Shown piece by piece: positions 24,786 through 49,645 of a DNA stretch of 64,000 nt. Below the pieces are notes generated by a model. The model was not told the DNA's origin and ran no database searches. It saw nothing but the letters and a program-made list of their open reading frames with translations. A program made the translations under genes and the position numbers. The first letter of the stretch is position 1, and each line of letters starts with the position of its first letter. Origin of the DNA: Malacoraja senta (Eukaryota); NCBI GenBank assembly GCA_038087875.1, contig JAXLNO010003607.1, positions 1 to 64,000 on the forward strand, given 5' to 3'.

Positions 24786-24975
24786 ATGGTGTTCGCGGTT
24801 ACACTCACCGGCGCTAAGTCCCCGCAAGTCCAGCTACGCACAAACATCTGCAGGTCATGTTGGCTCCGAGTAGATCCAGCGACCGGCCTTGAAGACGATG
24901 GCGTGGGAGACCGCGACCGAGATGTGCTTCCAGACCGAGATCTTGTCGGAGATCGGTGAGGTTCAGTCTCTTCGG
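24786..24975 (+). pseudogene. Histone H2B-like fragment running into an H3-like fragment
   Basis: KS/RKSSYA, NICR...RVDPATGL and KTM match H2B RSRKESYS, YVYK..QVHPDTGI and KAM. Then WETA-TEMCFQT matches H3 REIA..TDLRFQS. Confidence 0.65.
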
Positions 24976-25084
24976 TAAGAAGAAAAAGAGTTGGAGGAAC
25001 TCAGCGGGTCAGGCAGCATCTGTGGAGGGAATGGACAGACGACGTTTTGGATCGTGACCCTTCAAGACTCCATTCTAGTCTCCA

Positions 25085-25385
25085 TTTAACAGGTCAGTTT
25101 CCGACGACAGCAGGTACCAGAGGTTGATGGTCACCATGGGCTGGAATGACACATCGTTGAAGATCCCAAAGATCAATCTTGCTCCAAGTTCTCTGTGACC
25201 TCCCACACCTGGCGCTGGAGAAGCTGTTGAGGAACAACTTGGTGGGACTTCTTGTCGCCCTGGATCTCCTCCAGATGGTGTGAAGGGGAAAGCATGAAAC
25301 ATCTGCCGACTGATGTGGTTGCCAGCTGTTTGCGAGGAACTTTCCCTCCAAAGACTTGCAGGAAAATGCCACTGGGGCAGATGAT
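25085..25385 (-). pseudogene. Histone H3 pseudogene, left arm of inverted repeat 1
   Basis: Minus strand CKS-GGKVPRKQLATT matches RKSTGGKAPRKQLATK. Further pieces: LEEIQ, TKLFL, LQRQVWEV, SETDL. Confidence 0.8.
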
Positions 25386-25814
25386 GAGTCAGAGCCAGAC
25401 GAGTTTGACAAATTTCATAAACAATCTGTGCAACCCCAAGAGGGATTGGATAGCATGCAACAAAAGCCTTTCACTGTACCTCAGTACACATGACAATATA
25501 AATTAAAGTAAACTAAACTAAATGAATCTAAACTAAATTAATCTAAACTTAACTAAAACATAAAATAAACGTCAGGAACTCGAGCGCCGTTCGTGTAAAA
25601 CCATCGGATTTAAAGCCACATCGGTGGGGACCACACCGGAATTTCTCACTCTGTCCAACAAAGGCCCTAAAAGCGCCACTAGCCACCCCGCCTGCGCTCT
25701 CACCTGTATTTGGGAGTTCTTCGTCAACATTTCCCAATACAACAGGCAGCGATTTGTTGCACATGAGAATCCATGGCGTTTAAGAAATTTGTCAAACTCG
25801 TCTGGCTCTGACTC

Positions 25815-26112
25815 ATCATTTGCCCCAGTGACATTTTCCTGCAGGTCTTCGTAGGGAAAGTTCCTCATAAACAGCTGGCGACCACAACAGTCGGCAGATA
25901 TTTCATGTTTTCCCCTTCACACTGTCTGGAGGAGAACTGGGGCCACAAGAAATCCCACCAACTTGTTCCTCAACAGCTTCTCCAGTGCCAGATGTGGACG
26001 GTCATGCAGAATGTGGAGCAAGATTGGCCTTTGGGATCTTCAACCATGTGTTATTCCAGTCCATGGTGACCATCAACCTCTGCTGTCGTCGTTAACTGAC
26101 CTGGTGAATGGA
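25815..26112 (+). pseudogene. Histone H3 pseudogene, right arm of inverted repeat 1
   Basis: GKVPHKQLATT at about 25855-25890; reverse complement of 25085-25385. Confidence 0.8.
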
Positions 26113-26419
26113 GACTAGAATGGAGTCCTGAAGGGCCATGATTCAAAACATCATCTGTCCATTCCCTCCACATATGTTGCCTGACCCGCTGAGTTCCTCC
26201 AGCTGTTTTTCTTCTGACCGATGAGATTGAGCCTCGATGATCTGTTTCGGAGCCACAAAAAGTTGTTCCTCAACAGCTGCTCCACATGTGGAAGTTTGCT
26301 TCAAACTTGGAGAAAGATTGGCCTTCTTGCAAAGGCTTTTGATTCTGTCCCCAGACGTGGCTCTACCAGGTATTGGAGATGATTGGATGTCCACCACGTC
26401 TTCTAAACCTCACTCAGTC

Positions 26420-26497: not shown

Positions 26498-29400
26498 TGG
26501 GAGTATAAAGATAGAGTTAAAGGGAAAGCAAGTACCGGAAAAGTTACAAAAGACTCCCGACTTAATGGGAAGGAAAGTTTGAGAAGGGATAAGAGAGTAA
26601 GGTCAGAGCCAATAGTGACCGGTGTGAGAGGGGAGATGAATACCGAAGTTAAAGTGTTCTATATTAATGCACGAAATATAAGAAACAAAGTGGACGAGCT
26701 TGAGGCTCAGTTAGAAATTGGCAAGTATGATGTGGGAACAACAGAGACATGGCTGCAAAAGGAGCAGGGCTGGGAACTGAATATTCAAGGGTATAGGTCC
26801 TATCAAAAAGACAGGCAGAGGGGTTGGGGTAGCTCTGTTGCTGAGGAATGAAATTCAGTCCCTTGCGAGGGGTGACATAGAATCAGGAGATGTAGTCAGT
26901 ATGGATAGAACTGAAGAATTGTAAGGGTAAAAATACCCTAATGGGACTTATCTGCAGGCCCCCTTGGATATAGGGTGCAAATTGAATCAAGAGTTAAAAT
27001 TGCCATGTCATAAAGGTAATACTATGTTATGGGAGATTTCAACATGCAGGTAGACTGGGAAAATCAGGTTGGTACTGGACCCCAAGAAAGGGAGTTTGTG
27101 GAGTGCCTCCGTGATGGATTCTTAGAGCAGCTTGTATTGGAGCCTACCAGGGAGAAGGCAATTCTGGATTTAGTGTTGTATAATGAACCGGATTTGATAA
27201 GGGAACTCAAGGTAAAGGAGCCATTAGGAGGTAGTGACAATAATATGATCAGTTTTAATCTACAAGTTGAGAGGGAGAAGGGTAAATCGGAGGTGTCAGT
27301 ATTACAGTTGAATAAAGGGGACTATGGAGCCATGAGGGAGGAGCTGGCCAAAGTTGACTGGAAAGATACCCAAGCAGGGATGACAGTGGAACAACAATGG
27401 CAGGTATTTCTGCGAATAATATAGGTGCAGGAGCAGTTCATTCCAAATATGAAGAAAGATTCCAAAGGGAGTAAGGGGCGACCGTGGCTGACAAGGGAAG
27501 TCAGGAACATTATAAAAATAAAATAGGTATAACATAGCAAAGATGAGTGGGAAGCCATAGGATTGGTTAACGTTTAAAGAGCAACAGAAGATAACTAAAA
27601 AGGCAATACGGGGAGAAAAGATGAGGTATGAAAGTAAGCTAGCCAAGAATAGAAAGGATGATAGTAAAAGCTTCTTTAGGAATGTGAAGAGGAAGAAAAT
27701 AGTTAAGACCAAAGTTGGACCCTTGAAGACTGAAAAGGGTGAATTTATTATGGGCAACAAGGAAATGGCAGATGAGTTGAACAGGTACTTTGGATCCGTC
27801 TTCACTAAGGAAGACACAAACAATCTTCCTGAAGTACTAGTGGCCAGAGGATCTAGGGCGACTGTGGAACTGAAGGAAATCCACATTAGGCAGGAAATGG
27901 TGTTGGATAGACTGATGGGAATGAAGGCTGATAAATCCCCAGGCCTGATGGTCTGTATCCCAGGGTACTTAAGGAAGTGGCTCTAGAAATTGTGGATGCA
28001 TCGGTGATAATTTTCCAATGTTCTATAGATTCAGGATCAGCTCCTGTGGATTGGAGGGTAGCTAATGTTATCCCAATTTTTAAGAAAGACGGGAGAAAGA
28101 AAACGGAATTATAGACCAGTTAGCCTGACATCGGTGGTGGGGAAGATGCTGGAGTCAATTATAAAAAGATGAAATAGCGGCACATTTGGATAGCAGTACA
28201 GGGCCTGTCCCACTTTGCGATTTTTTTTGGCGACTGCGAGCGTCAATGACTGACGCCCGTAAAACCGTCAAGTTGTACAACATACACACTGACGTATGCT
28301 GTCCTGTGGGTGATGCCCGGTTAGGGTTAGGGACCACAGATGGGCTATAAAATATTCTTCCTTCAATGCATGATTTTAAACATTAATATATTAAAATTAA
28401 TGCAATATAATCAATTGTGCAAATGAAAAGATGCCTGAGTCGTTCAGTTTTATTTACAGATGTATTGGTCCGCTTACAGAGCCAATCACCTTCTCTAACT
28501 ATTCATAGGGATGGATTCAGTGAGTGTAGACTGAACTCCCCTCTCCATTCCACCCCCATCTTCCCCCTCCCGCTCTCTCCCTCCTTGTCTACTACCCCCC
28601 CTACCCTTCTCCCCTCTCCCCCCTTCTTTCCTTCCCCCCTCTTCCTCCCTTCTCCCCGCTCCACTCTCTCCCCTTCTTCCCTCCCCCCCTCTTCCTCCCT
28701 TCTCCCCACTCCACTCTCTCCCCCTTCTCCCCTCACATCCCCATCTCCCTCCCTTCTCCCATTCTCCAACCCCCCTCCCCCCCAGGTTCCCCGATGCCCC
28801 CCATTTGTGGACCCAGCCTGCGACCAGCGAATACCCGCATACTATCCCACACATGCTAGGGACAATTTATACAAACCGTAACCCTAGCCATAACTCTTAA
28901 CTCTAACTCTAACCATAACCCTAACCCCAGCCCTAACGCTAACCCTAACTCTAGGTTAATAGGCTTGGTATACATATAAATTGTCCCAAGCATGTGTGGG
29001 ATAGTATGCGGGGGATCGCTGGTCGGTGCGGACTTGATGGTCCGAAAGGCACTGTATCTCTGAACTAAATGTGATACAGGGGCCCCAGGGATTGGACTCA
29101 AACCCCCAATGTTCTGCCTGCTCATGGGAACTAAACTGTTGACCACGAGTTGTCCCAGAGGCAGATCTCTCTTCCAATGGTCTCTCCAAACCTCCAGAGG
29201 CAGTGGGCTTTTCAACTGGGTACAGGCAATGTTGTCAATGTACCAGTGCCACCCACCTGCTCCCGCCACTGGGTCTAAATACCCACCACCCATTTTGAAG
29301 CAAGGTGAGGGGGCGGGGAGGTGGGGGGTTGTTACCAAAGTCTGCATTTATCCCATAGTCAATGTCACTAAAACAGATGATGTGGCCTTTGCTGGGGGGG

Positions 29401-30757
29401 GGGGGGGGCGGTTGGAGAATGGGAGAAGGGAGGGAGAGGGGAGAAGGGTAGGGGGGTGGTTAGTGAAGAAGGAGGGATGGTGCAGGAGGGGGGAGAGGAT
29501 AGTTCAGTCTTCACTCACTGAATCCATCCTTGTGAAAAGTTAGAGATGGTGATTGGATCTGGAAGCCGACCAATACATCTGTAAATAAAACTGAACGACT
29601 CAGGCATCTTTTCATTTGCACAATTGATTTCATTGTATCAATTTTAATATATTAATATTTAAAACCCATGCATTGATGGAAGAATATTATACAGCCCATC
29701 TGTGGTCCCTAACCCTAACCAGCGTCACCCGCAGGACAGCAAACGTCAGCGTGTGACAGGGCGCACGATGTGATGAGACACCCAGAGACATTCCAAAATC
29801 CAGGGGCGACAGTGAGACACCGCGTCACTACATGCATCACACCAAGTCACGACCCAACCACGAAGCGACAACTTCTTTTCAGGCTGTCGCCCAAGTGGGA
29901 CTGGCCCTAAACAGGATCGGTCCGAGTACGGCATGGATTTACAAAGGGGAAATCATGCTTAACTAATCTTCGGGAATTGTTGAGGATGTAACTAAGAAAA
30001 TGGACAAGGGAGAGCCAGTGGATGTAGTGTACCTGGACTTTCACAAAGAATTCAATAAGGTCCCACATAGGAGATTAGTGGGCAAAATTAGGGCACATGG
30101 TTTTGGGGTAGAGTGCTGACATGGATACAAAATTGGTTGGCGGGCAGGAAACAAGGAGTAGGGATTAACGGGTCCCTTTCAGAATGGCAGGCAGTGACTA
30201 GTGGGGTACCGCAAGGCTTGGTGCTGGGACCGCAGCTATTTACAATATATTTATTAATGATTTAGGTGAAGGGATTACGTAACATTAGCAAATTTGCAGA
30301 TGACACAAAGCTGGGTGGCAGTGTGAACTGTGAGGAGGATACTATGAGACTGCAGGGTGACTTGGATAGGGGTGAATGGGCAGATGCATGGCAGATGCAG
30401 TTTAATGTGGATAAATGTGAGGTTATCCACTTTGGTAGCATAAACAGGAAGGCAGATTATTATCTGATTGGTGTCAGGTTGGGAAAAGGGGAAGTACAAC
30501 GGGATCTGGGGGTTCTTGTTCATCAGTCAATGAAACTAAGCGTGCAGGTACAGCCGGCAGTGAAGAAAGCGAATGGCATGTTGGCCTTTATAACAAGAGG
30601 AATCGAGTATAAGGAGCAAAGAGGTCCTTCTGCAGTTGTACAGAGCCCTAGTGTGACCACATCTGGAGTATTGTGTGCAGATTTGATCTCCAAATTGGAG
30701 GAAGGACATTCTTGCTATTGTGGGAGTGCAGCATAGGTTCACAAGGTTAATTCCCGG
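26498..30757 (+). mobile_element. Decayed CR1 LINE ORF2 (endonuclease through RT), interrupted at 28200-29908
   Basis: [31 protein letters not shown], with multiple stops and frameshifts. Confidence 0.9.
28200..29908. mobile_element. PIF/Harbinger-like non-autonomous element with long internal inverted repeats
   Basis: TIRs AGGGCCTGTCCCACTT and AAGTGGGACTGGCCCT (15/16 match). Flanks TAC and AAA fit a decayed TAA target in CR1 GATAGCAG-TAA-CAGGATC. Confidence 0.75.
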
Positions 30758-32050: not shown

Positions 32051-32404
32051 AAGGAAGGTTGTGTCCCAGCTCCCATGCTTTGTCTTCACGACTGACACAG
32101 AAGGAGCGTATCTTCACACTAGAAGCGACAGGAACCTCTTCATTCTAGCAACGCTTAAAGCCAAGACCAAGGTAAGAACTGTGCTTATAAATGTCCAATG
32201 GTTCTTTATTAGACATATTTACCGAGCTAAAGTGAAATTCATTTCTGTATAAACTTAAATACATGTATCACCATACATAATCACTTTGACAAAACTTATA
32301 TAAGCATCTCGGATACGGTACAAGTGTGTAACAGTAGTAGGTTGAGATAGTAGACAGAGAGGCCAGGTTTGGTGCCATTTCTCAAGTCTCAGTTTGTAAG
32401 TGCA

Positions 32405-33140
32405 GGGTTCTTGTGTTGTTGTGTTGGCTGGGTGTGTGTGGGGGGGAGGGGGAGCGGGTGGGGGGGAGGGGGAGCGGAAGGGGGGAGGGAGTGCAGTGAG
32501 CATTGTTGAGCTGGAGAGGGGGAGGGAGGATGTGGGAGGGGGAGAAGGGGGTGCGGGGGTTGTGTAGGGGAGGGGGTTGTGTAGGGGAGGGGTGTGGGGG
32601 AGGGAGGTGTGTGTTGGCCAGATGTGTGTAGAGAGGGGGAGGGAGGGGGGCAGTGAGTGTTGTGGAGCTGGAGAGGGGTTGTGGTGGGTGAGGGTGAGGT
32701 GTGTGTGGGGGAGGGGGTGCAGTGGGAAAGAGGAGGGGGAGTGGGGGAGTGGGAGGGGGTGTGGGGGAGAGAGGATGTGGGAGGGGGAGAAGGGGGTGTG
32801 GGCAAGCGGTGTGTGTTGGGTGGTGGGTGGGTGGTGTGTGGGCGGGGGATAGGTGTGTGTGTTGGGGGGGAGGAGGGGTGTGTGGGCGGGTGTGTGTGGA
32901 GGGGATGGAGGGGGGCAGTGAGTGTTGTGGAGCCGGAGGGGGATTGTGGGTGAGGGTGAGGTGTGTGGGAGGGGGAGAAGGGGGTGTGGGCAAGGGGTGT
33001 GTGTGGACAGGGGAGGGGGTGCAGGGGGAGGGGGTGTGTGTGGGGGGTGGGCGGGAAGGGTGTTGTGTGGGTGGGCAGTGTGTTGGGGGAGGGGGTGCAG
33101 GGGGAGGGAGGGGTGTGTGTGGGGGAGGGGGAGGGGTGTA
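32405..33140. repeat. G/T-rich degenerate satellite
   Basis: Almost only G, T and A on the + strand (gggggagggg, gtgtgtgg), with internal near-duplicated blocks. Confidence 0.9.
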
Positions 33141-33269
33141 TTTCTTGCTGTAGATTAACAAGCTTGTAACTGCAACAACACAAAAAATCATTAATTTACA
33201 TTTCAGTAAATTGATACTCACGATACTACTGTAAACACGTCTAATGCAACCAAAGACTCAGTCCATAGT

Positions 33270-34500
33270 TCTCAGTTCATAGATGTGGTTTGTGTCGGGC
33301 AGTGTTCAAGAGCCTGATGATTGCTGGGATCAAGCTGTTCCTGAACCTGGAGGTCACGTTTTTTGGGCTTCTGAACAAAATAATGGGAGCTTAGTGCAAT
33401 AACACACAGATAACTAATAAAATAAAAATACAGGAAATTAATAATTGAATGCTAGTGTAAAAAATATCTGTCGGGCAGCAAAAGACGCAGTCCATAATAT
33501 CTCATCGTTGTGGTTCATGTTGTGCAGCGTTCGAGAGGCTTGTAATTGCTGGGAAGAAGCTGCTCTTAAACATGGAGGTCAAGTTCTCTGCTTCTGTGGG
33601 GTTTTCTGTGGTAGGGTGGTGTGGGTCTTTGATATTAGCTGCCTTCTGCAGGTAGCATCTCCTGCAGAGCCCTTTGATGGTGAAGAGATCATCACCTGTG
33701 ACGGACTGAGCCGTTTCTGCGTAACACACGCGTAACACCAACATCGTCACACTGTACAAGAACAAGGGAATGCACCAACTACTGTTCTATTTAATTATTT
33801 AATTGTCATATGTACAGGCAACAGAACCGTTAAATTATTTCTTGCTGTAGATTAACAAACCTGTAATTGCAACAACACAAAAATGCATTAATCAAAATGT
33901 CAGTAAATTAATCGTCTTGATACCAGTGTAAATATTGTCTGTAAAGCAACTTAAGCCTCAGTCTGTAGTTCTTCATTGTTCATAGTTGTGGTTAGTGTTG
34001 GGCAATGCTTACGAGCCTGATGGTTGCTGGGAAGAAGCTGCTCCTGAACCAGGAGGTTATGTTTTTTAAGGTACAGAACCTTGTTGCAAATGGTAGGACT
34101 GAAATATCGAGAGTGTGGTCAGGATGGTGTGGGTCTTTGACATTAGCTACCTTTTGGATGCAGCATCTCCTGTAGATCGCTTTGATGGTGGGGAGATCAT
34201 TACCTGTGATGCACTGAGCAGTTTCTACCACTCTGTATTCTTCTTCATTCCTGGGAGTTTGAATTGCTGAACCAGGCTGCAGTGCAACCAGTCAGTGTGC
34301 TCTCTCCCATACAACTGTCCAAGTTCAACAGAGTATTCATCAACATGCCGAATCTCCTCAATCTTCTGAACAAGTAGAGGTGATGATGAGTCTTGTATGT
34401 GATTGCATTGATGTGCTGGACCCAGGACAGATCTTCAGAGACATGGACAACCAGGAACTTGCAACATAACATTCTCCACCACTGCCCCATGAATGAAGAC
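33270..34500 (-). mobile_element. Rex1/Babar-like LINE remnants; duplicated at about 37110-37980
   Basis: KFLVVHVSEDLSW..HINAI..K.H..LY.FRRLRRFG, ESTLTGC..AWF and RSSFFPATIRL. Confidence 0.7.
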
Positions 34501-34560
34501 AAGTTTGTGGATCATCGGTTTTCCCCTCCTGAGGTGATCGACCTCTGCCATGTTTCCTGT

Positions 34561-34750
34561 GATTGACCAGATGACAATATCTGATGAGATGGCCATGGAC
34601 CAGGGCTGGCACGCAGAAGCTTTATCACACCTGACCCTGCTGTGTTCCTGAGGAAGATCTGGTGTCACTGGGAATATGGAGCTGATCCTCTATAAACTGC
34701 CCTCAATGGAAGACCATGATGAAGGTGCATCTATAGAGCTCGGCTGTCAG
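34561..34750 (+). pseudogene. Histone H3 fragment (module B); copies at 36127, 38037, 39600 and 41630
   Basis: GTQK.HHT*P, VFLRKIWCH, ELILYKLP and *SSAV match GVKKPHRYRP, VALREIRRY, ELLIRKLP and QSSAV. R to W/C changes fit CpG decay. Confidence 0.75.
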
Positions 34751-34864
34751 CGAAGTTGGAACAGAAATCTGCTGGAGCAACTCAGTGGGTCAGGCAACAT
34801 CTGTGGAGGGAATGGACAGACGATGTTTGAATCCGGACCCACCAAGACTCCATTCTTGTCTCCA

Positions 34865-35520
34865 TTTACCAGGTTGGATTATGATGGCATGAAATGGCCA
34901 AGATTGATGATCACTGTGGACTGGAGTGACAGATGACTGAAGATCCTGAAGACCCAATCTTGCTCCACGGTCTGCGACCTTCCACACCTGGAACTGGAGA
35001 AGTTGTTGAGGAACAACTTGGTGGGATTTCTTGTGGCCCTGGATCTACTCCAGATTGTTTGAAGGGACAAATGTGACAGATGTCTGAGTGCCAGCGATTG
35101 GCCGAGGACGGGCCCTCGGTGGGTGCCGGAGGTCGGTCGAGTATGTGGCGCCGAGAGAACATGGCATCTGGGGAGGGAATGGGCAGATGACGTTTGGATC
35201 AGGATCCTTCAAGACTCCATTCTTGTCTCCATTTACCAGGTCACTTTCTGACGACATGAAATGGGCAAGTTTAATGATCACAGTGGACTTGAATGACTGA
35301 ACCTTGAAGATCCCAAAGGCCAATCTTACTCAACGTTCTACGCGACCTTCCACACCTGGCATTGTTGAGGAACAACTTGGTGGGACATCTTGTCGCCCCG
35401 GATATCCTCCAGACAGTGTGAAGGGGAACATCTGCTGACTGATGAGGTCGTCAGCTGTTTGCGAGGAACTTTCTCGCCGAAGACTTGCATGAAAATGCCA
35501 CTGGGGCAGATGATGAGTCA
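34865..35520 (-). pseudogene. Two antisense H3 pseudogene fragments (34865-35055, 35230-35520); duplicated at +3476
   Basis: Same module as 25085-25385; minus strand EKVPRKQLTT near 35480-35450. Confidence 0.75.
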
Positions 35521-35609
35521 GAGCTGGACGAGTTAGACATATTTCTTAAACGGCGTGGATTCTCCCGTGCAACCTCAACAGGGATTGGATAGCACGCAAC
35601 AGAAGCGAT

Positions 35610-35732
35610 GTCAGGAACCCGAGTGCCGTTCGTGGAAAACCATCGGATATGAAGCCACATCGGTGAGGACCGCACCGGAATTTCTCACTCCGTCCAACAA
35701 AGGCCCTTTTAAGAGCCACTAGAAAAAGAGCT
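35610..35732 (+). promoter_or_regulatory. H3 C-terminal remnant followed by a histone mRNA 3' stem-loop and U7 downstream element
   Basis: NPSAVRGK/PSDM resembles NLCAIHAK/PKDI. Then AAA-GGCCCT-TTTA-AGAGCC-ACT (35702-35717, one C-A mismatch) and AAAAAGAGCT (35723-35732). Confidence 0.85.
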
Positions 35733-35869
35733 ACAACCTCTTCCCCACCTGCGCTCTCATCTGCATTTGAGATTTCATCGTCAACATTTCCCAGTACAAC
35801 TGGCAGCGATCAGTTGCACGGAGGAATCCACGCCTTTTAAGAAATTTGTCAAACACATCTGGCTCTGAC

Positions 35870-36120
35870 TCATCATCTGCCCCAGTAGCATTTTCCTGCA
35901 CGTCTTCAGAGGGAAAGGTCCTCACAAATAGCTGGCGACCACATCAGACGGCAGAAGTTTAATGTTTTCCACTTCATACCTTCTGGAGGAGATCCAGGCC
36001 CACAAGAGGTCCCACCAAGTTGTTCCTCAAAAGCTTCTCAAGCGCCAGGTGTGGAAGGTCATGGAGAACTTGGAGTAAGATGCCATTCAAGTCCACGGTG
36101 ATCATCGACCTCCGCCACGT
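35870..36120 (+). pseudogene. Histone H3 pseudogene, right arm of inverted repeat 2; duplicated at 39346-39596
   Basis: GKGPHK*LATT, LEEIQ, TKLFLK, KRQVWKV and FKSTVIIDL. Confidence 0.75.
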
Positions 36121-36399
36121 TCCTGAGATTGACCAGATGACAATATCTGATGAGATGGCCATGGACCAGGGCTGGCACGCAGAAGCTTTATCACACCTGA
36201 CCCTGCTGTGTTCCTGAGGAAGATCTGGTGTCACTGGGAATATGGAGCTGATCCTCTATAAACTGCCCTCAATGGAAGACCATGATGAAGGTGCATCTAT
36301 AGAGCTCGGCTGTCAGCGAAGTTGGAACAGAAATCTGCTGGAGCAACTCAGTGGGTCAGGCAACATCTGTGGAGGGAATGGACAGACGATGTTTGCAAT

Positions 36400-36540
36400 C
36401 GGCACGGAGCCGGTCAAGACCAGACTCGGCCGGCGGTGACCGCAAACAAGGAAGAGCCCGGCAGCCAAAGTGTCTGCGGAGAACGAGGGTCAAAGACGGG
36501 CCCGCGGTGGGTGCCGGAGGTCGGTCGAGGACGTGCTGCC
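36400..36540 (+). pseudogene. Possible histone H2A fragment; copies at 39745-39890 and 42330-42435
   Basis: VKTRLGR and QGRAR...LRR....PAVGAGG resemble AKTRSSR and VGRVH..LRK....ERVGAGA. CpG-rich; weak match by eye. Confidence 0.4.
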
Positions 36541-36689
36541 GAGAAGGAAGAGGGACCATCAGGGACCACATTGGTCACTCATCACCCCAACAGAAGAAGG
36601 ACTTCAGGGGCTGATGGACAGACTGTCTCAAGCTCGCAACAAAGACCGACTGACAATCATCAGAGAGACGGTGGTGTCCCTCAACACAT

Positions 36690-37109
36690 GTGTAACACCA
36701 ACATCGTCACACTGCACAAGGACAAGGGAGATCACAGCAAGTGCACCAACTACAAGGGACATCTCACTTCTGAGTGTTACAGGAAAGGCCTTTGCCAGAG
36801 TGATCCTACAAAGACTGCACAGACTCGCTGACCTGAGGCACAATGCGGTTTCCATGGAGATAGATCCACAATGGACATGATCTTCTCCCTGCGTCAAATC
36901 CAAGAAAAATGTCAAGAGCAGCAAACCCCATTGTTCATCGCCTTTGTGGATGTTACGAAAGCTTTTGATTCTGTCAGCAGACATGGCCTCTACCACCTAC
37001 TGGAGAAGATTAGATGTCCACCACGTCTTCTAAACCTCTCTTGGTCCTTCCATGAGAACATGCATCTACAGTAGTGGAAATTGATGAAGCTACATCGGAT
37101 AGTTTCCAC
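36690..37109 (+). mobile_element. RTE-clade LINE RT remnant; longer copy at 40035-40985 and a piece at 42505-42800
   Basis: IVTLHKDKGD....NY, ISLLSVTGKAFARV, DMIFSLRQIQEKC.EQ..PLFIAFVDVTKAFD and ADDAAL. Confidence 0.85.
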
Positions 37110-39177
37110 ATTAGCTGCCTTCTGCAGGTAGCATCTCCTGCAGAGCCCTTTGATGGTGAAGAGATCATCACCTGTGACGGACTGAGCCGTTTCTGCGTAA
37201 CACACGCGTAACACCAACATCGTCACACTGTACAAGAACAAGGGAATGCACCAACTACTGTTCTATTTAATTATTTAATTGTCATATGTACAGGCAACAG
37301 AACCGTTAAATTATTTCTTGCTGTAGATTAACAAACCTGTAATTGCAACAACACAAAAATGCATTAATCAAAATGTCAGTAAATTAATCGTCTTGATACC
37401 AGTGTAAATATTGTCTGTAAAGCAACTTAAGCCTCAGTCTGTAGTTCTTCATGGTTCATAGTTGTGGTTAGTGTTGGGCAATGCTTACGAGCCTGATGGT
37501 TGCTGGGAAGAAGCTGCTCCTGAACCAGGAGGTTATGTTTTTTAAGGTACAGAACCTTGTTGCAAATGGTAGGACTGAAATATCGAGAGTGTGGTCAGGA
37601 TGGTGTGGGTCTTTGACATTAGCTACCTTTTGGATGCAGCATCTCCTGTAGATCGCTTTGATGGTGGGGAGATCATTACCTGTGATGCACTGAGCAGTTT
37701 CTACCACTCTGTATTCTTCTTCATTCCTGGGAGTTTGAATTGCTGAACCAGGCTGCAGTGCAACCAGTCAGTGTGCTCTCTCCCATACAACTGTCCAAGT
37801 TCAACAGAGTATTCATCAACATGCCGAATCTCCTCAATCTTCTGAACAAGTAGAGGTGATGATGAGTCTTGTATGTGATTGCATTGATGTGCTGGACCCA
37901 GGACAGATCTTCAGAGACATGGACAACCAGGAACTTGCAACATAACATTCTCCACCACTGCCCCATGAATGAAGACAAGTTTGTGGATCATCGGTTTTCC
38001 CCTCCTGAGGTGATCGACCTCTGCCATGTTTCCTGTGATTGACCAGATGACAATATCTGATGAGATGGCCATGGACCAGGGCTGGCACGCAGAAGCTTTA
38101 TCACACCTGACCCTGCTGTGTTCCTGAGGAAGATCTGGTGTCACTGGGAATATGGAGCTGATCCTCTATAAACTGCCCTCAATGGAAGACCATGATGAAG
38201 GTGCATCTATAGAGCTCGGCTGTCAGCGAAGTTGGAACAGAAATCTGCTGGAGCAACTCAGTGGGTCAGGCAACATCTGTGGAGGGAATGGACAGACGAT
38301 GTTTGAATCCGGACCCACCAAGACTCCATTCTTGTCTCCATTTACCAGGTTGGATTATGATGGCAGGAAATGGCCAAGATTGATGATCACTGTGGACTGG
38401 AGTGACAGATGACTGAAGATCCTGAAGACCCAATCTTGCTCCACGGTCTGCGACCTTCCACACCTGGAACTGGAGAAGTTGTTGATGAACAACTTGGTGG
38501 GATTTCTTGTGGCCCTGGATCTACTCCAGATTGTTTGAAGGGACAAATGTGACAGATGTCTGAGTGCCAGCGATTGGCCGAGGACGGGCCCTCGGTGGGT
38601 GCCGGAGGTCGGTCGAGTATGTGGCGCCGAGAGAACATGGCATCTGGGGAGGGAATGGGCAGATGACGTTTGGATCAGGATCCTTCAAGACTCCATTCTT
38701 GTCTCCATTTACCAGGTCACTTTCTGACGACATGAAATGGGCAAGTTTAATGATCACAGTGGACTTGAATGACTGAACCTTGAAGATCCCAAAGGCCAAT
38801 CTTACTCAACGTTCTACGCGACCTTCCACACCTGGCATTGTTGAGGAACAACTTGGTGGGACATCTTGTCGCCCCGGATATCCTCCAGACAGTGTGAAGG
38901 GGAACATCTGCTGACTGATGAGGTCGTCAGCTGTTTGCGAGGAACTTTCTCGCCGAAGACTTGCATGAAAATGCCACTGGGGCAGATGATGAGTCAGAGC
39001 TGGACGAGTTAGACATATTTCTTAAAGGGCGTGGATTCTCCCGTGCAACCTCAACAGGGATTGGATAGCACGCAACAGAAGCTATGTCAGGAACCCGAGT
39101 GCCGTTCGTGGAAAACCATCGGATATGAAGCCACATCGGTGAGGACCGCACCGGAATTTCTCACTCCGTCCAACAAA

Positions 39178-39208
39178 GGCCCTTTTAAGAGCCACTAGAA
39201 AAAGAGCT
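39178..39208 (+). promoter_or_regulatory. Second copy of the histone stem-loop + U7 element
   Basis: Identical to 35702-35732 at offset 3476. Confidence 0.85.
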
Positions 39209-41934
39209 ACAACCTCTTCCCCACCTGCGCTCTCATCTGCATTTGAGATTTCATCGTCAACATTTCCCAGTACAACTGGCAGCGATCAGTTGCACGGAGG
39301 AATCCACGCCTTTTAAGAAATTTGTCAAACACATCTGGCTCTGACTCATCATCTGCCCCAGTAGCAGTTTCCTGCAAGTCTTCAGAGGGAAAGGTCCTCA
39401 CAAATAGCTGGCGACCACATCAGACAGCAGAAGTTTAATGTTTTCCACTTCATACCTTCTGGGGGAGATCCAGGCCCACAAGAGGTCCCACCAAGTTGTT
39501 CCTCAAAAGCTTCTCAAGCGCCAGGTGTGGAAGGTCATGGAGAACTTGGAGTAAGATGCCATTCAAGTCCACGGTGATCATCGACCTCCGCCACGTTCCT
39601 GAGATTGACCAGAGGACAAGATCTGAAGGGACGGCCACGGACCAGGGGTGGCACGCAGAAGCTTCATCACACCTGACCCTGCTGTGTTGCTGAGGGAACC
39701 TCCCGGTGAGCGCCGCACAGCCGTGCTGGAGCCGACCCAGCAATCGGCACGGAGCCGGTCAAGACCAGACTCGGCCGGCGGTGACCGCAAACAAGGAAGA
39801 GCCCGGCAGCCAAAGTGTCTGTGGAGAACGAGGGTCAAAGACGGGCCCGCGTTGGGTGCCGGAGGTCGGTCGAGGACGTGCTGCCGAGAAGGAAGAGGGA
39901 CCATCGGGACCACATTGGTCACTCATCACCCCAACAGAAGAAGGACTTCAGGGGCTGATGGACAGACTGTCTCAAGCTCGCAACAAAGACCGACTGACAA
40001 TCATCAGAGAGACGGTGGTGTCCCTCAACACATGTGTAACACCAACATCGTCACACTGCACAAGGACAAGGGAGATCACAGCAAGTGCACCAACTACAAG
40101 GGACATCTCACTTCTGAGTGTTACAGGAAAGGCCTTTGCCAGAGTGATCCTACAAAGACTGCACAGACTCGCTGACCTGAGGCACAATGCGGTTTCCATG
40201 GAGATAGATCCACAATGGACATGATCTTCTCCCTGCGTCAAATCCAAGAAAAATGTCAAGAGCAGCAAACCCCATTGTTCATCGCCTTTGTGGATGTTAC
40301 GAAAGCTTTTGATTCTGTCAGCAGACATGGCCTCTACCACCTACTGGAGAAGATTAGATGTCCACCACGTCTTCTAAACCTCTCTTGGTCCTTCCATGAG
40401 AACATGCATCTACAGTGGAAATTGATGAAGCTACATCGGATAGTTTCCACATGAGAAGTGGAGTGAAGCAAGGCTGTGACCCAACTCCCATGGTGTTTGG
40501 CATCTTCCTATCTGCCCTTTGCCTTCCCAACATACACGGGAGACGTGTATCTTCAAACCAGAAGTGACGGGATGCTCTTCAATGTGGCAATGTTGAAAGC
40601 CAAGACGAAGGTGAGAACTGTGCTTATAAGGGAACTCCAGCCCGCTGATGATGCTGCACTCAGTTCCTCAACAGAAGAAGGACTTCAGGGGCTGATGGAC
40701 AGACTGTCTCATGCTTGCACCAAAGACCGACTGGCAATCAGCATTAAGATGACTGTTGTCATGGATCAGGGCACTCCACTCCCCTCTGAAATCACCCTAA
40801 ACACCACTACGCTGGAAAATGTCTTAAATTCACCAACCTAGGATCTACGGTGACTGACAGCCACTCTCTGGATGAGGAAACCAATTCACGTACAGTAACC
40901 CACCTTCGAGAGACTAAGCAAGTGGACATGGAAGAACAGGAAACTCACAATGAAGACCAAGGTAACTGTCTACAACGGAGACAGTTTTTATTTTTTTATT
41001 CTGCTTATATGTTTTGTAATCTGCTTATCTGCAAGGCATCCTTGAGAGTCTTTGAAAGGTGCCCATAAGTGTAATGATAAATAAAAAATAAAAAAATAAA
41101 AATCAATGAAGTCAAGTTTGTGGATCTGCGGCTTTCTCCTGAGGTCAACAAATAGCTCTGTGGTTCTGCAGACATTGAGAACAAAACGTCTGCACTGGCA
41201 GCATTTCCTCTCAATCTCTCTCCTGTACTCTGACTCGTCATTACCCATTATTTGTCCAACAACGGTGGTATCGTCGGTGAAATTTAAAGATGGCTTTGGA
41301 ATGGTCTGGCTGTGCAGTCCTGGTCATAGAGCAGGGGAGTGAACACACAGCCTTGAGCTGGTCATGTGTTGGTTATAGAGGAGGAGGTGTTGCCCGTTTG
41401 TGCTGATTGTGGTCTGCTGATGAGGAAATTGAAGATCCTTTTGTACAGGATTGAGCAGAGACAAGGTTAAGGAGATGTGTGAGGACATCCAGGACAGATT
41501 TTCAGAGACATGGACACGCAGGAACTTGCAACATAATGTTCTCCACCACTGCCCCATGAATGAAAACAAGTTTGTGGATCATCGACTTTCCCCTCCTGAG
41601 GTCATCGACCTCTGCTGTGTTTCTTGTGATTGACCAGAGGACAATATCTGAAGAGACGGCCATGGACCAGGGCTGGCACGCAGAAGCATCATCACACCTG
41701 ACCCTGCTGTGTTGCTGAGGAAGATCTGGTGTCACTGGGAATGTGGAGCTGATCCTCTGTAAACTGCCCTCAGTGGAAGACCATGATAGAGATGTGTTTT
41801 TAGAGCTCGGCTGTCAGCGAAGGAGGAGCAGAAAACTGCTGGAGGAACTCAGCGGGTCAGGCAGCATCTGCGGAGGAAATGGACATATGACATTTGGATC
41901 GAGACCCTTCAAGAATCCATTCTTGTCTCCATTT

Positions 41935-42125
41935 ACCAGGTCAGTTTCTGATGACAGGAAATGGCCAAGATTGACCATCATCATGGACTTGCATGTCAGA
42001 TGCTTGAAGATACTGAAGACCCAATCTTGCTCCACGTGCTCTGCGAACTTCCACACCTGGCGCTGGAGAAGCTGTTGAGGAACAACTTGGTGGGATTTCT
42101 TAGGGTGCTGGATCTCCTCCAGATT
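41935..42125 (-). pseudogene. Antisense H3 pseudogene fragment
   Basis: ORF 41814-42182(-) contains LEEIQHPKKS...LQRQVWKFAE...SETDLVN. Confidence 0.7.
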
Positions 42126-43434
42126 GATTGAAGGTGGGTGCCAGAGGTCGGTCGAAGACACGACTCCGAGAGGACTTTTCATCTGTGGAGGGATTGGACA
42201 GACAACGGTTTGGATCAGGAACCTTCAAGATTCCATTCTTGTCTCCATTTACCAGGTCGGTTTCTGATGACAGGAAATGGCCAAGATTAATGATCACCGT
42301 GGACTTGAATGACAGAAAATTGAAGCCGCTCAAGACCGGACTCGGCCCGCAATGGCCACGAACAAGGACAAACCCGGCAGCCGAAGTGACCGCCGAGACA
42401 AGTGTCCAGTACGGGCCCTCGGTAGGTGCCCGAGGCCAGACTGCTCATGGAATGACGCGCCGCTGAGAAGGAAGAGGAACCATCGGGACCATATTGGTCA
42501 CTCATCACCCCAACAGAAGAAGGACTTCAGGGGTTGATGGACAAACTGTCTCCTGCTTGCAATGATTACCGATTGGCAATCAGTATTAAGACGACTGTTG
42601 TCATGGACCAAGACACTCCACTCCTCTCTAAAATCATCCTAAACACCAGTCAGGTGGAAACTGTCATCAAATTCACCTACCTAGGATCAACGTTGACTGA
42701 CTGCCACTCTGTGGACGAGGAAATCAATTCACCTACAGCAAACCACCTTCCTATACAGTAACCACATTCTGGAGTATATCCAAGCAGACATGGAAGAACA
42801 GGAGTAACAATGTCCTATTGGCAGCATTCCCTCAGATTATCAATCTCTCTCCTGTACTCTGTCTGACTCGTCATTACCCATTATTTGTCCAACAATGGTG
42901 GTACCGTCGATGAAATTTAAAGACGGCATTGGAATGGTCTGGCTGTGCAGTCCTGGTCATAGAGCAGGGGACTGAACACACAGCCTTGAGCTGGTCCTGT
43001 GTTGGTTATAGAGGAGGGGGTGTTGCCAGTTTGTGCTGAGCTGGAGGCCTTGCTCGAGACTGACATTGAGCCCCACCGCAGGGTCGTGGACTTACCATCG
43101 GAGCCTGCGATCCCTTGCCTGTGATCGACACTCCAACTGTGGGTTTCAACATCAAGGAGCTCGCAATCTCAGGTAGAAACTGATGTCAGGAAGGTCCAAA
43201 GTCGCAGGAGGTTCGACCAGCCCCAACCCGGGGTCTGATCGCCTGACGCGGGGGAGCTGAGATCCCCCCGATGCAGGAGCTTGATCGCCCCAACGCGGAG
43301 GGCCAGACCGCTGGCTACGGGAGCCAAGATCGCCCCGTCAACTGAAGTCTCGAGGACCCCGATTGCAGGAGAACAAAGAAGGGAAGAGATTGAACTTTTT
43401 CTAGGGTGATCATCAGCCTCTGATTGACCTGAGA

Positions 43435-43750
43435 TTGACCATAGGACAAGATCTGAAGAGATGGCCATGTACCAAGGGAAACATGTAGAAGCATCATCGC
43501 TCCTGACTCATCTGTGTTCCTGAGGACAATGTGGTGCTGCTAGGAATAGACTGAGCTGCTTCTCCGCTGAACTGCCTTCCAGTCCCTGGTATGGGACATC
43601 GCTCGGGACTTCAGGTAAGACCTTTACTTGGGTATCCTTCCTCTGCAATTCCCTACGAGATAGACCTTACAAACAGTTGTAGAACACTCACTGGCAGCAT
43701 ATTCATGGCTCCCGATCTCTCACTGTCTGAAGCAGCTCCTGTGCCACCAA
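43435..43750 (+). pseudogene. Most complete histone H3 pseudogene in the window
   Basis: 43511-43630 translates without gaps to SVFLRTMWCC*E*TELLLR*TAFQSLVWDIARDFR*DLYL versus H3 [40 protein letters not shown] (18/40 identical). Downstream *NTHWQHIHGSR resembles EDTNLCAIHAKR. Confidence 0.88.
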
Positions 43751-45179: not shown

Positions 45180-45365
45180 CAATGGGCTTTGGGATCTTCA
45201 GCATTGCCCTGCCCTTCAAGTCCATGGCTGATGATCTACCTCCAACATTTTGCTGCACAGTGCCAGAGGGAAAAATCGAGTAGAAGCCCATTGAAGCCTC
45301 GTCACTACGGACTGCAACCTGTTCCAAAGAGAGAGATCAGATGTCACCAGAAACCCACTGTAACC
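45180..45365 (+). pseudogene. Distal H3 fragment
   Basis: KPRHYGLQPVPKREIRCHQKPT matches [22 protein letters not shown]. It is preceded by the same gggatcttca...ttcaagtcca module as the other copies. Confidence 0.7.
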
Positions 45366-47759
45366 ACTCTGGACACTGCTCTTCCAGGGTGCAGGACGTA
45401 CTCAGTATGTACCCTTCCAAAGGTTGTCTATGTAGACAGCAAGACTTAACCTGTTGGGGTCATGACTATGTATTGTCCAACCACGGAGTTGTTCTGAAGT
45501 CCTGACCTCCCTTTCTTTTGCAGCAGGTGACTCAAATCCCACCCACCCTTTTGAAGGTCATTGTAAAAGCCACTAATAAAGAGCCGTGATCTTGTATATT
45601 GGTCTTTTTTTATTTTGTGTCTCTGGAATTCTGGACTCTCAATACATCTCACCAAAGCTAAGAAATCTGGTTATGGTAAAGAGTTCTCAAATACAAATGT
45701 AATGACTTTATGCTGATGGAATTCTACAAGATGCCGTTGTTATCAAGAAGGAGGAGGTGTTGGGCTCTGCGAAGCAGTGAAGTGGAGAGGTGCCAGGGGC
45801 TGACCGGATCGATGGAATTGTGACAGGCCATTGGACACAGATGCATCCCACAGAACACAGAACAGTACAGCATTTTCGATGATCAGCCATAATCATATTG
45901 AATGGTGGTGCTGGCTCGAAGGGCCAAATGGCCTGCTCCTGCACCTATGTTTCTATCTATCAGTCTATCTGTGACTCTATCTATGACTCTATCTCTGCCT
46001 TCCCCACATCCATGTTCACCCACACACTGTGCTACTAAGTTGCCACTCCACTTTGACTTTTAATTCTGAAGCATACTGGTACAGTCTGCTTCAAAATTAC
46101 AGTTAAAGACTGTCTGGCCACTTCTGAGAATGATTTCTCCTCTGTTTATTCAAATTCCATTCACGCCATATTAACCCATTTAAATAAACGGGGCAAAGCC
46201 TTTAAAATGGCAGAGCGCAACCTGATACGATGCCCTTAAGCCTCCTGTGATAACATCTCCCATCATTTACAGCTTCATACTTTGCCTTCTGACACTCTGT
46301 AATGGGCGCACAAGTGATATGTGAAGTCTTGATATTACCACAGGGTATCTAAATATAGCACACGTTAGATGTAGGCTGTCTACTAAAGCTATTAACTCTG
46401 GCCATAAATGAAATGAAAGCAGCATATTAACCGCGCTCCGTGCTTGCATTCTGTCAGCTTTCTCTGCAGTTGTCACATTGCAGTGTCAGCTACAGCTGCA
46501 GCCCCGACTGATGTCTGCTCACACCTCTGTCTTGTAGTCTGCAACATCCCCAGGAGTCTGGGACCCCTCCTTTTCCACCTCTCACCAGTCTGCTGCTCCC
46601 CCCCCCCTCCACCTCTCTCCCTGCCCCCCTCCCCCATCCACCTCTCCCTGCCCCACCCCCCTCCTCCACCTCTAAAAACACTTGGACGGGGTTACATGGA
46701 TATGAAAGGTTTAGAGGGATGTGGATCAAATGCAGGCAAACAGGACTAGTTTAGATGGGCATCTAGGCTGCCATGTTGGGCTGAAGGGCCTGTTTCCATG
46801 CTCTGCAAATCGATGACATTCACTTCCCTCTTCAAAACACATTTGATTTCATTCAAAATAATCTTATTGCCAGCGTCAGCAATTTGCCAAAGTATCTCAA
46901 TACATGCCCAATGCATCATCTAAAATAGACTTTTAATTGTTTACATTTAGACGAACCCTTCTGTGGTCAATAGCTTCCTTGGATTAACTAGTCACCTTGT
47001 AAACCTTCATGGATCACGGTAAACTCTTTGCTGAAGAATATTCATCCAGCTTCCATAATGTTTCCTTGTGTGATGTTCAACATCTTCACGTAACCACAGG
47101 TTGTCTTGTTTCCCTTGAGGACATTCTTCTCCAAATACCAATGCCCAGGATTTACTGGAATATTCAATTCTAGTACAAATGCTCTTTGCATTCTTATTTC
47201 ATAGTCTTTGGAAATTATTATTGGCACTGTTATAGAGTCATATAATCGTTGTATAGTACAGCACAGGAACAGACCCTTTGGCCCACTTGTACATGCTGAC
47301 CAAATTGACATATTGGGCCAGTCCTATTTGCCTAGGTGCCCAGGTGCAGAAGAATGTCATTAAATTGGAAAGAGTGAAGAGGACGTTCACCAGGATGTTT
47401 CCTGGGCTTGTGGGCTTGAGTTATATTGGCCCATATCCCTCTAAACTTGTCCCATCCATATATCTGTTCAAATACGTTTAAAAATCATAATTGTATCTGC
47501 TTCTTTTGCTTTCCCTGGCAGCCCGTTCCTGATATAGATTAACCTGCATGAAAAAGTTGCCCCTGAGGTCCCTCTTAAATCTCCCACCTCTTGCTTTAAG
47601 CCTGTGTCCTCAAGTATTTGAATCCTCTAACCTGGGAAAAAGACTGTGAGCGTTCACTTTATCCATGCCCCTCATGATTTTGCACACCTCAAACAAAATC
47701 ACCACTCAGCCTGCTACACTTCAAAGAAAAAATGTGTAGCCTAACCGACTTTCCTCTAT

Positions 47760-49524: not shown

Positions 49525-49645
49525 TTTAGTGTAGTCTAGTTTAGTTTAGTTTAGTTTTTTAGTTTAGTTACATTTATAGTTTAGTTTAGAAGTTTAATTT
49601 AGTATAGTAGTTTAGTTTATTTAGTAGTTTAGTTTTGTTTAGTTG
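49525..49645. repeat. (TTTAG)n degenerate microsatellite
   Basis: Direct reading; same motif as the SINE tails. Confidence 0.85.

What the first reader, a model, noticed from the sequence alone, without database searches (positions are those of the whole stretch)
35275..39581. The same hairpin architecture recurs twice more, with a histone stem-loop + U7 site in the loop
Seen: arms 35275-35573 and 35813-36105 (repeated at 38751-39049 and 39289-39581) are inverted H3 pseudogenes. The ~240-nt loop holds an H3 C-terminal remnant, GGCCCT-TTTA-AGAGCC and AAAAAGAGCT. The 25-kb hairpin has the same loop order with a more decayed stem-loop (25663). The arm-loop-arm cassette is therefore an amplifying unit. 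Long inverted repeats are usually unstable, yet three are retained.
Basis: partly seen in the sequence, partly recalled or inferred. Interest (0 to 1): 0.7.

Follow-up and report, generated by a model that had tools for sequence, protein, structure and literature searches.

The report
Decayed histone H3 pseudogene inverted repeats
Two broken, head-to-head copies of a dead histone H3 gene separated by a 239-base spacer really are there and recur, but one "extra" copy is only part of a recent 3.5-kb tandem duplication and all arms are decaying independently, so this looks like an ordinary genomic fossil and not a working or self-amplifying hairpin.

Summary
The inverted repeat is real at the stated coordinates: arms 35275-35573 and 35813-36105, with a 239-nt spacer. 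It recurs at 38751-39581 and, in an older form, at 24950-26243.

The arms derive from histone H3 (CDS nt ~24-280, head-to-head). Only a DNA profile of H3 genes shows this (E 5e-13 to 0.004); Pfam and PDB protein searches find nothing. The spacer holds a histone 3' stem-loop with one broken pair (Rfam 21.2 bits, gathering 34). An AAAGAGCT box lies 7 nt downstream. The claimed H3 C-terminal remnant is not better than chance.

The 38.7-kb copy is not an independent hairpin. It rides in a two-copy tandem duplication (33634-37109 / 37110-40452) that is 99.3% identical with a 2-nt microhomology junction.

The four older arms are 83.5-88.7% alike in every pairing, a near-star tree. They group neither by hairpin nor by side, so there is no arm-to-arm conversion or upkeep of pairing. 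The stem-loop and box are lost in the 25-kb paralogue.

The arms were already badly decayed H3 before they were copied. In the 25-kb cassette each arm ends in half of an abundant TA-flanked palindromic MITE. The repeat runs about 30 nt beyond the MITE ends and there are no target-site duplications, which argues against transposition.

Most likely this is a fold-back inverted duplication of a dead H3 gene, later copied by local segmental duplication. The scan had already noted the 25-kb hairpin.

The parts
35275..35573 (-). Left arm: histone H3 pseudogene fragment, antisense. It covers the 5' flank from about -90 and CDS nt ~24-280, with the H3 5' end facing the spacer. Two private 9-nt deletions.
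   Evidence: nhmmer H3 DNA profile: 35490-35379 = nt 24-121 (E 0.004) and 35407-35295 = nt 150-267. tblastn H3 residues 13-32 at 35478-35419. Arm alignment.
35574..35812 (+). 239-nt single-copy spacer ('loop') between the arms. It is homologous to the 25-kb spacer.
   Evidence: 177/214 ungapped identity to the 25-kb spacer.
35702..35717 (+). Histone 3' stem-loop remnant GGCCCT-TTTA-AGAGCC. Five of six pairs remain; stem position 4 is C where the consensus has T.
   Evidence: Rfam RF00032, 21.2 bits (gathering 34), E 0.07. Pattern search: 0.3 matches expected by chance in the window.
35723..35732 (+). AAAAAGAGCT, a U7/HDE-like purine box starting 7 nt after the stem.
   Evidence: AAAGAGCT occurs 3 times in 128 kb of both strands (2.6 expected), and 2 of the 3 sit directly behind the stem-loops. 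Chance of one falling in a 20-nt slot on the right strand is about 4e-4 (my arithmetic).
35813..36105 (+). Right arm: H3 pseudogene fragment, sense. It covers the 5' flank and CDS nt ~27-280. It has in-frame stops and a private 25-nt deletion.
   Evidence: nhmmer 35899-35946 = nt 27-75 and 35989-36113 = nt 151-280. tblastn 35911-36081. Arm alignment.
38751..39049 (-). Left arm, copy 2 (tandem-duplicate of 35275-35573).
   Evidence: 99.7-99.8% identical to the copy-1 arm.
39050..39288 (+). Spacer, copy 2, with stem-loop at 39178-39193 and AAAAAGAGCT at 39199-39208.
   Evidence: 270/271 identical.
39289..39581 (+). Right arm, copy 2.
   Evidence: 98.6-98.8% identical to 35813-36105.
33634..37109 (+). 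Tandem-duplication unit, copy 1 (3476 bp). It carries the cassette, four more H3 fragments and LINE-derived debris.
   Evidence: megablast: 33634-36219 = 37110-39695 at 99.3% (18 mismatches, no gap) and 36395-37111 = 39740-40452 at 99.2%.
37110..40452 (+). Tandem-duplication unit, copy 2 (3343 bp, 131 bp shorter than copy 1 at 39696-39739). The junction shows 2-nt microhomology AT.
24950..25422 (-). Left arm of the older paralogous cassette: 30 nt of flank, half a MITE (24985-25063), unassigned ~60 nt, then H3 antisense.
   Evidence: (I1, I5).
25423..25777 (+). Spacer of the 25-kb cassette. Order is the same as at 35 kb, the stem-loop is damaged (~25660-25682) and the AAAGAGCT box is absent. 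An unrelated interspersed repeat of ~127 nt is inserted at 25444-25570.
25778..26243 (+). Right arm of the 25-kb cassette: H3 sense, then the other MITE half (26146-26208, inverted), then 30 nt of flank.
36104..36400 (+). Second-type H3 fragment (CDS nt ~103-271, sense) abutting the outer terminus of a MITE half. Paralogues lie at 34537-34833, 38013-38309, 41602-41896 and 43405-43626.

Best explanation
This is a non-functional relic. A replication-dependent histone H3 gene died and decayed. It lies in a 21-kb H3-only graveyard spanning about 24.3-45.4 kb of the window. The dead gene underwent a fold-back type inverted duplication. That left two head-to-head copies of its 5' flank plus CDS nt ~24-280 around a single-copy spacer. 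The spacer still carries the 3' stem-loop and U7-box remnant of a histone gene, presumably an upstream H3. The whole arm-spacer-arm block was duplicated locally soon afterwards, giving the 25-kb and 35-kb copies. Much later it was duplicated again as a passenger of a microhomology-mediated 3.5-kb tandem duplication, giving the 35-kb and 38.7-kb copies. Since then each arm has accumulated its own substitutions and indels. Shown here: the architecture, the H3 ancestry, the tandem duplication and its junction, and the independent decay of the arms. Inferred: the fold-back mechanism, the order of the two early events, and the lack of function.
For: H3 ancestry: the nhmmer H3 DNA profile gives colinear, mirror-ordered hits in both arms and stronger hits in the paralogues (43478-43626 at E 1.5e-12; 25269-25139 at E 1.7e-6). 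No H4, H2A or H2B remnant occurs anywhere in the window. The arms share the same large departures from H3: about 25-31% amino-acid identity, the same ~33-nt loss and stop codons. They are nevertheless 83.5-88.7% alike to each other, so the template was already dead when it was copied. Cassette copied as a unit: the spacer and both junctions are shared between 25 kb and 35 kb. Passenger duplication: 3476-bp unit, 99.3% identity, AT microhomology at the junction. No homogenisation: quartet sites 3/1/4, private changes of 6-14 per arm, terminal branches 0.05-0.09 against 0.003-0.01 for the recent duplicates. No constraint on the 3' signals: the stem-loop is broken and the HDE box is missing in the 25-kb paralogue. 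Inverted duplications with a single-copy spacer are the signature of fold-back repair (PMC3907307, title and abstract; the spacer signature itself is my knowledge of that work).
Against: The fold-back junction cannot be checked for microhomology after about 15% divergence. The tree does not cleanly recover left-with-left and right-with-right as a simple unit duplication predicts: left arms held together give p-AU 0.03. So either the two early events were nearly simultaneous, or there was some early exchange between arms. The half-MITEs at both outer ends of the 25-kb cassette are an odd coincidence under a purely segmental model.
Confidence: 0.72

Rival explanations
1. The cassette is the cargo of a mobile element. 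A TA-targeting MITE or foldback-type DNA transposon captured an H3 fragment (Pack-MITE-like transduplication), acquired long inverted arms, and spread by transposition. In that case it would be a true 'amplifying unit'.
For: In the 25-kb cassette each arm ends in one half of an abundant ~170-nt TA-flanked palindromic MITE, in inverted orientation: 24985-25063 (+) and 26146-26208 (-), 81% to a full copy, E 8e-17 and 2e-12. A TA precedes the left terminus. TE-mediated amplification of H3 is known in fungi (PMC6710886).
Against: The inverted repeat continues about 30 nt beyond the MITE termini (arms 24950-25113 / 26080-26243), and the right flank has GA, not TA. The flanks therefore belong to the palindrome and are not a target site. 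The 35-kb cassette has only an inner piece of one MITE half on the left and none on the right. All H3-like copies lie within 21 kb and none in the other 43 kb, whereas the MITE itself is everywhere. The ~60 nt between the MITE half and H3 is not the other MITE half. No related ORFs were found in the 5.8-billion-protein collection.
Confidence: 0.1
2. The hairpins are kept because they are transcribed into long hairpin RNA and yield endo-siRNAs or piRNAs, like pseudogene inverted repeats in mouse oocytes or Drosophila hpRNA loci. The small RNAs would act on H3 or on the local repeat array.
For: The 831-nt cassette folds into one long imperfect hairpin: -446 kcal/mol against -247 +/- 8 for shuffles, z -23.9. 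There are three copies.
Against: Any inverted repeat gives such a z-score. The arms decay independently with no sign of maintained pairing. The template was already far from H3 when duplicated, so siRNAs would hardly have matched live H3 mRNA. One of the three copies is a recent passenger duplicate. There are no expression data.
Confidence: 0.06
3. Part of the pattern is an assembly artefact. The 35-kb and 38.7-kb copies would be two haplotypes, or a mis-joined long-read overlap, written in tandem, so the genome holds only two cassettes.
For: 99.3% identity plus one 131-bp indel is in the range of allelic difference. The mismatches are clustered: 12 of 18 lie in 35891-36213.
Against: There are no Ns or gaps in the window. 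The junction is clean with 2-nt microhomology, as in real tandem duplications. A third, 88%-identical partial unit at 41489-42582 shows that the locus does duplicate in tandem. The inversions themselves cannot be fold-back read artefacts because their arms differ by 11-20% with indels.
Confidence: 0.1

Closest known systems
Fold-back inverted duplications with a single-copy spacer (human germline/somatic inverted duplications, PMC3907307; ODIRA/template-switch models, PMC4689423, PMC10766183)
   Same: Two inverted arms flank a short unduplicated spacer. The setting is local and repeat-rich. Further duplication of the product occurs nearby.
   Different: The scale is tiny (0.3-0.47-kb arms against kb-Mb). 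The event is ancient and heavily decayed, so the junction microhomology that defines the mechanism can no longer be read.
Pseudogene-derived inverted repeats that give endo-siRNAs (mouse oocytes; reviewed or used in PMC2708354, PMC3616710, PMC11239679) and Drosophila hpRNA loci
   Same: Inverted copies of a gene-derived sequence are able to fold into a long hairpin.
   Different: There is no evidence of transcription. The arms were copied from an already dead, strongly diverged H3, and complementarity is decaying rather than being kept.
Transposon-mediated amplification of histone H3 in Dothideomycete fungi (hAT transduplication, PMC6710886)
   Same: H3 coding sequence multiplied as dead copies next to DNA-transposon sequence.
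   Different: In the fungi there are hundreds of dispersed copies inside a complete hAT element. Here a handful of fragments are confined to 21 kb, with only half-MITEs and no TSD.
Replication-dependent histone gene 3' end (Rfam RF00032 stem-loop plus U7 HDE)
   Same: The 16-nt stem-loop has the right flanks (CAAA...ACT) and a purine AAAGAGCT box downstream on the same strand.
   Different: One stem pair is broken and the score is 21.2 bits against a gathering score of 34. The box starts 7 nt after the stem, closer than the ~13-17 nt I recall for working genes. It follows no recognisable coding end.

Membership tests
Histone H3 gene / pseudogene | Sequence homology to the H3 coding region | tested here: met
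   nhmmer with a profile of 53 H3 CDS gives hits in both arms, colinear with H3 nt 24-280: E 0.004 to 0.07 in the 64-kb search, and 1.7e-6 / 1.5e-12 in paralogues. Protein-level Pfam and PDB searches are blank.
Histone H3 gene / pseudogene | Intact reading frame (live gene) | tested here: not met
   There are stops, frame breaks, a shared ~33-nt loss and private 9- and 25-nt deletions. CDS beyond nt ~280 is not detectable.
Histone 3' UTR stem-loop (RF00032) | Score at or above Rfam's gathering threshold | tested here: not met
   21.2 bits against 34. There is no hit at gathering level in the whole window. It is a remnant, not a member.
Histone 3' UTR stem-loop (RF00032) | U7-binding purine box downstream at working distance | tested here: inconclusive
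   AAAGAGCT is present 7 nt after the stem. The spacing is shorter than in working genes (from knowledge). The box is absent in the 25-kb paralogue.
Fold-back inverted duplication | Inverted arms around a single-copy spacer | tested here: met
Fold-back inverted duplication | Short inverted microhomology at the novel junction | not testable with these tools
   The arms are 11-20% diverged, so the junction sequence is no longer informative.
MITE / Pack-MITE / foldback transposon | Element bounded by the family's terminal inverted repeats | tested here: inconclusive
   This holds for the 25-kb cassette only. The 35-kb and 38.7-kb cassettes lack them.
MITE / Pack-MITE / foldback transposon | Target-site duplication (TA) directly outside the termini, with unrelated flanks | tested here: not met
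   The left has TA and the right has GA. The flanks themselves are inverted repeats for about 30 nt.
MITE / Pack-MITE / foldback transposon | Dispersed copies | tested here: inconclusive
   There are none outside 24.9-45.4 kb in this window. Genome-wide copies could not be searched with the tools on hand.
hpRNA / endo-siRNA hairpin locus | Transcription and small RNAs from both arms | not testable with these tools
hpRNA / endo-siRNA hairpin locus | Arm complementarity maintained over time | tested here: not met
   Partner arms (83.5% at 35 kb, 87.4% at 25 kb in the 230-column core) are no more alike than non-partner arms (84.8-88.7%). The tree is unresolved.

The most novel reading that the evidence does not exclude
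Head-to-head histone-gene fragments tied to TA-flanked palindromic MITEs may be a recurrent product in this skate-like genome: H3 here, with MITE halves capping the 25-kb palindrome, and H1 inside MITEs elsewhere according to an earlier scan note. That would point to a specific process that repeatedly turns histone-gene DNA into hairpin cassettes. Candidates are breakage or template switching at MITE palindromes inside histone clusters, or MITE-mediated transduplication. Some of these cassettes might be, or once have been, small-RNA sources.
Probability: 0.1. Interest if true: 0.55.

Novelty: new member of a known kind. Interest (0 to 1): 0.22.

Why it matters
As it stands it matters little. 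It is a well-documented small example of how a dead gene is shuffled by fold-back and tandem duplication, and of how an inverted repeat becomes harmless through divergence. It corrects the count of independent hairpins from three to two. It also shows that the good-looking histone 3' signals are leftovers and are not conserved. It would gain interest only if a genome-wide survey showed that histone-fragment hairpins next to palindromic MITEs are a systematic feature of skate genomes, or that they are expressed.

Tried and rejected
- Protein-level recognition of H3 in the arm ORFs failed: Pfam and PDB phmmer gave no hit at E<=10.
- To get a tool-derived H3 reference I fetched H3 genes from metagenome contigs with a degenerate IMPKDIQLA pattern. 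I used only their histone coding sequences as generic references. I took none of these contigs for human.
- The H3 C-terminal remnant in the loop was rejected as unsupported: nhmmer found nothing and local alignment was no better than shuffles.
- H3 beyond nt ~280 in the arm tails is not significant.
- My idea that the ~60 nt between the MITE half and H3 is the decayed second MITE half was rejected.
- My first reading of the 36099-36241 block as an antisense MITE/SINE was rejected. Its 3' part is H3 nt 103-271.
- H4, H2A and H2B remnants as owners of the 3' end: none in the window.
- A search for related ORFs in the 5.8-billion-protein collection found nothing.
- Exact-ORF look-ups of two junction ORFs in public assemblies found nothing.
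- Findings look-up by MITE sequence was blank.
I therefore have no read support, depth, expression or species identification, and read laying was not used.
- A literature search for a described skate/shark MITE of this kind turned up nothing specific.


Full report
**What is in the sequence**

The window is repeat-rich vertebrate DNA without Ns. Earlier scan notes call the genome skate-like; I could not verify the species. The core arms 35427-35573 and 35813-35959 are 84% complementary with 239 nt between them. With gaps the match runs 35323-35573 against 35813-36081 at 79% over 269 columns. The outermost ~22 nt at 35275 and 36105 also pair. The same block recurs at 38751-39581. An older version lies at 24950-26243, with arms 24950-25422 / 25778-26243 at 87% over 473 columns.

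**Are the arms H3?**

At protein level they are not recognisable as H3. Eight ORF pieces gave no Pfam Histone hit, and a 122-aa paralogous ORF gave no PDB hit at E<=10.

I obtained real H3 genes through a tool: a degenerate pattern on metagenome contigs gave 53 intact H3 CDS, including the canonical animal H3.2. tblastn with H3.2 gives weak hits, all in the same register. The hit at 25349-25152 covers H3 residues 13-90 at E 0.002. The hit at 35478-35419 covers residues 13-32 at E 0.1. The hit at 35911-36081 covers residues 14-82 at E 3.4.

A DNA profile of the 53 CDS (nhmmer) is decisive for the family:
- 43478-43626 = CDS nt 101-251, E 1.5e-12
- 25269-25139(-) = nt 150-276, E 1.7e-6
- 25361-25308(-) = nt 24-78, E 9e-5
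- 35490-35379(-) = nt 24-121, E 0.004
- 39459-39589(+) = nt 145-280, E 0.019
- 35989-36113(+) = nt 151-280, E 0.067

The hits are colinear with H3 and mirror-ordered in the two arms. The arms are therefore head-to-head H3 fragments, covering about -90 of the 5' flank to CDS nt ~280. Beyond nt ~280 nothing is detectable. No H4, H2A or H2B remnant exists in the window. H3 fragments of two types fill 24.9-45.4 kb in both orientations, which agrees with the scan's note s1-140243.

**The spacer**

Rfam finds the histone stem-loop at 35697-35741 and 39173-39217. The score is 21.2 bits against a gathering score of 34, with E 0.07 for 16 kb times 4227 families. For this one family that would be roughly 2e-5 (my arithmetic).

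The stem GGCCCT/AGAGCC has one broken pair. AAAGAGCT follows 7 nt later. The 8-mer occurs only three times in the window, against 2.6 expected, and two of the three are these sites. The pairing of the two signals is therefore not chance, and they are the remnant of a histone 3' end.

The 'H3 C-terminal remnant' upstream of the stem-loop is not supported. nhmmer finds nothing. Best local alignments to H3 nt 291-411 are matched by 115/200 (35 kb) and 22/200 (25 kb) dinucleotide shuffles. The only hint is a 16-nt match to the RRIRGE codons at a sensible distance from the stem-loop in the 25-kb copy.

The 25-kb spacer is colinear with the 35-kb spacer (177/214 ungapped identity). Its stem-loop is destroyed and the AAAGAGCT box is gone. 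It has also received a ~127-nt insertion of an unrelated interspersed repeat at 25444-25570. The 3' signals are therefore not under constraint.

**How many independent hairpins?**

There are two, not three. Region 33634-36219 equals 37110-39695 at 99.3% (18 mismatches, no gap). Region 36395-37111 equals 39740-40452 at 99.2%. This is a two-copy tandem duplication of a 3476-bp unit. The junction shares the dinucleotide AT.

The unit holds the cassette, four other H3 fragments and LINE-like debris. The 38.7-kb hairpin is a passenger. Twelve of the 18 mismatches cluster at 35891-36213, next to a 131-bp length difference. In that region copy 1 (36104-36400) is 98.3% identical to 34537-34833 of the same unit. 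Copy 2 keeps states shared with older paralogues. This points to a conversion or patch event between direct repeats.

I aligned the arms in H3 sense. In a 230-column core all six pairings of L25, R25, L35 and R35 are 83.5-88.7% identical. Partner arms (L35/R35 83.5%, L25/R25 87.4%) are no closer than non-partners (L25/R35 88.7%).

Quartet-informative sites split as follows: 3 for left/right grouping, 1 for grouping by hairpin and 4 for the crossed topology. Private changes number 6-14 per arm.

An ML tree that also includes three partial copies has long terminal branches (0.05-0.09) and short, weakly supported inner ones. Forcing the left arms together is marginally rejected (p-AU 0.03). Forcing the 35-kb arms together is not rejected but is not supported (p 0.155). 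L25+R25 has 62/48 support.

So the inverted duplication and the cassette duplication happened close together in time. No later arm-to-arm homogenisation is visible, and each arm decays on its own. This agrees with the earlier follow-up on the 25-kb hairpin (s1-140586).

All arms share the same gross departures from H3, yet they are about 85% alike to each other. The template was therefore already a badly decayed pseudogene when it was copied.

**The MITE connection**

The outer ~80 nt of each 25-kb arm is one half of a ~170-nt TA-flanked, almost perfectly palindromic MITE. This MITE is scattered through the window in at least 25 whole or half copies, for example 54879-55050, 63052-63222 and 63648-63826.

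Several observations speak against it:
- The inverted repeat runs about 30 nt past the MITE termini.
- There is no TA/TA duplication.
- The 35-kb cassette lacks the termini.
- The H3-like sequence is confined to one 21-kb stretch.
- No related ORFs exist in the large protein collection.

I keep this reading as a 10% rival.

**Mechanism and function**

An inverted pair around a single-copy spacer is what fold-back repair or template switching leaves (PMC3907307, PMC4689423, PMC10766183). I infer that mechanism; the junction is too decayed to show it.

The RNA of 35275-36105 would fold into one long imperfect hairpin (-446 kcal/mol, z -23.9). That follows from any inverted repeat. Without expression data (look-up of sequencing runs closed) and with independently decaying arms, I put a hairpin-RNA function at about 6%.

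The supposed paradox of three 'retained' long inverted repeats dissolves. From general knowledge, instability falls steeply with spacer length and arm divergence. Here spacers are 239-355 nt and arms are 79-89% alike. One of the three copies is a very recent passenger.

**Verdict**

The evidence points to an ordinary, decaying pseudogene palindrome in a locally duplicating H3 graveyard. The scan had already found the paralogous 25-kb hairpin and the fragment array on this same window.

Noticed in passing
window 54879-55050, 63052-63222, 63648-63826, 15970-16112 and >=20 further half copies: An abundant ~170-nt TA-flanked, nearly perfect palindromic MITE with termini like (TA)GACACAAAAAGCTGGAGGAACTCAGCGGGTCAGGCAGCATC. 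Each copy could fold into an ~85-bp hairpin. Halves of it cap the 25-kb H3 palindrome.
   Followed up: partly
window 36104-36400 vs 34537-34833 vs 39580-39740: Inside tandem unit 1 two direct H3 fragments 1.57 kb apart are 98.3% identical. The counterpart in unit 2 differs, is 131 bp shorter and keeps older states. This looks like a gene-conversion or patch event around the time of the tandem duplication. 12 of the 18 unit1/unit2 mismatches cluster at 35891-36213.
   Followed up: partly
window 43478-43626 (+): This is the best-preserved H3 piece of the window (CDS nt 101-251, nhmmer E 1.5e-12; 60% amino-acid identity over residues 59-83). It ends at a GTAAG. Another piece lies at 45293-45390.
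   Followed up: partly
window 28811-29038 (arms 28374-28546 / 29492-29664): Another palindromic element matches Rfam MIR7533 on both strands, far below gathering (54 vs 230 bits). The match is probably just hairpin shape.
   Followed up: no
window 9763-11976 and 11945-12658 (+): A long open non-LTR retrotransposon ORF with endonuclease and reverse-transcriptase domains (Pfam E 1e-11 and 9e-33). It may be a young LINE copy.
   Followed up: partly
window 32380-33220: About 0.8 kb of G-rich, imperfect (GGGGGAGGGGGTGTG-like) low-complexity repeat lies directly upstream of the tandem-duplicated unit.
   Followed up: no
window 25444-25570: An unrelated interspersed repeat with an (AAACT)n-like tail is inserted in the 25-kb spacer. 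Copies lie at 57266-57346, 61657-61731 and 49524-49601.
   Followed up: no
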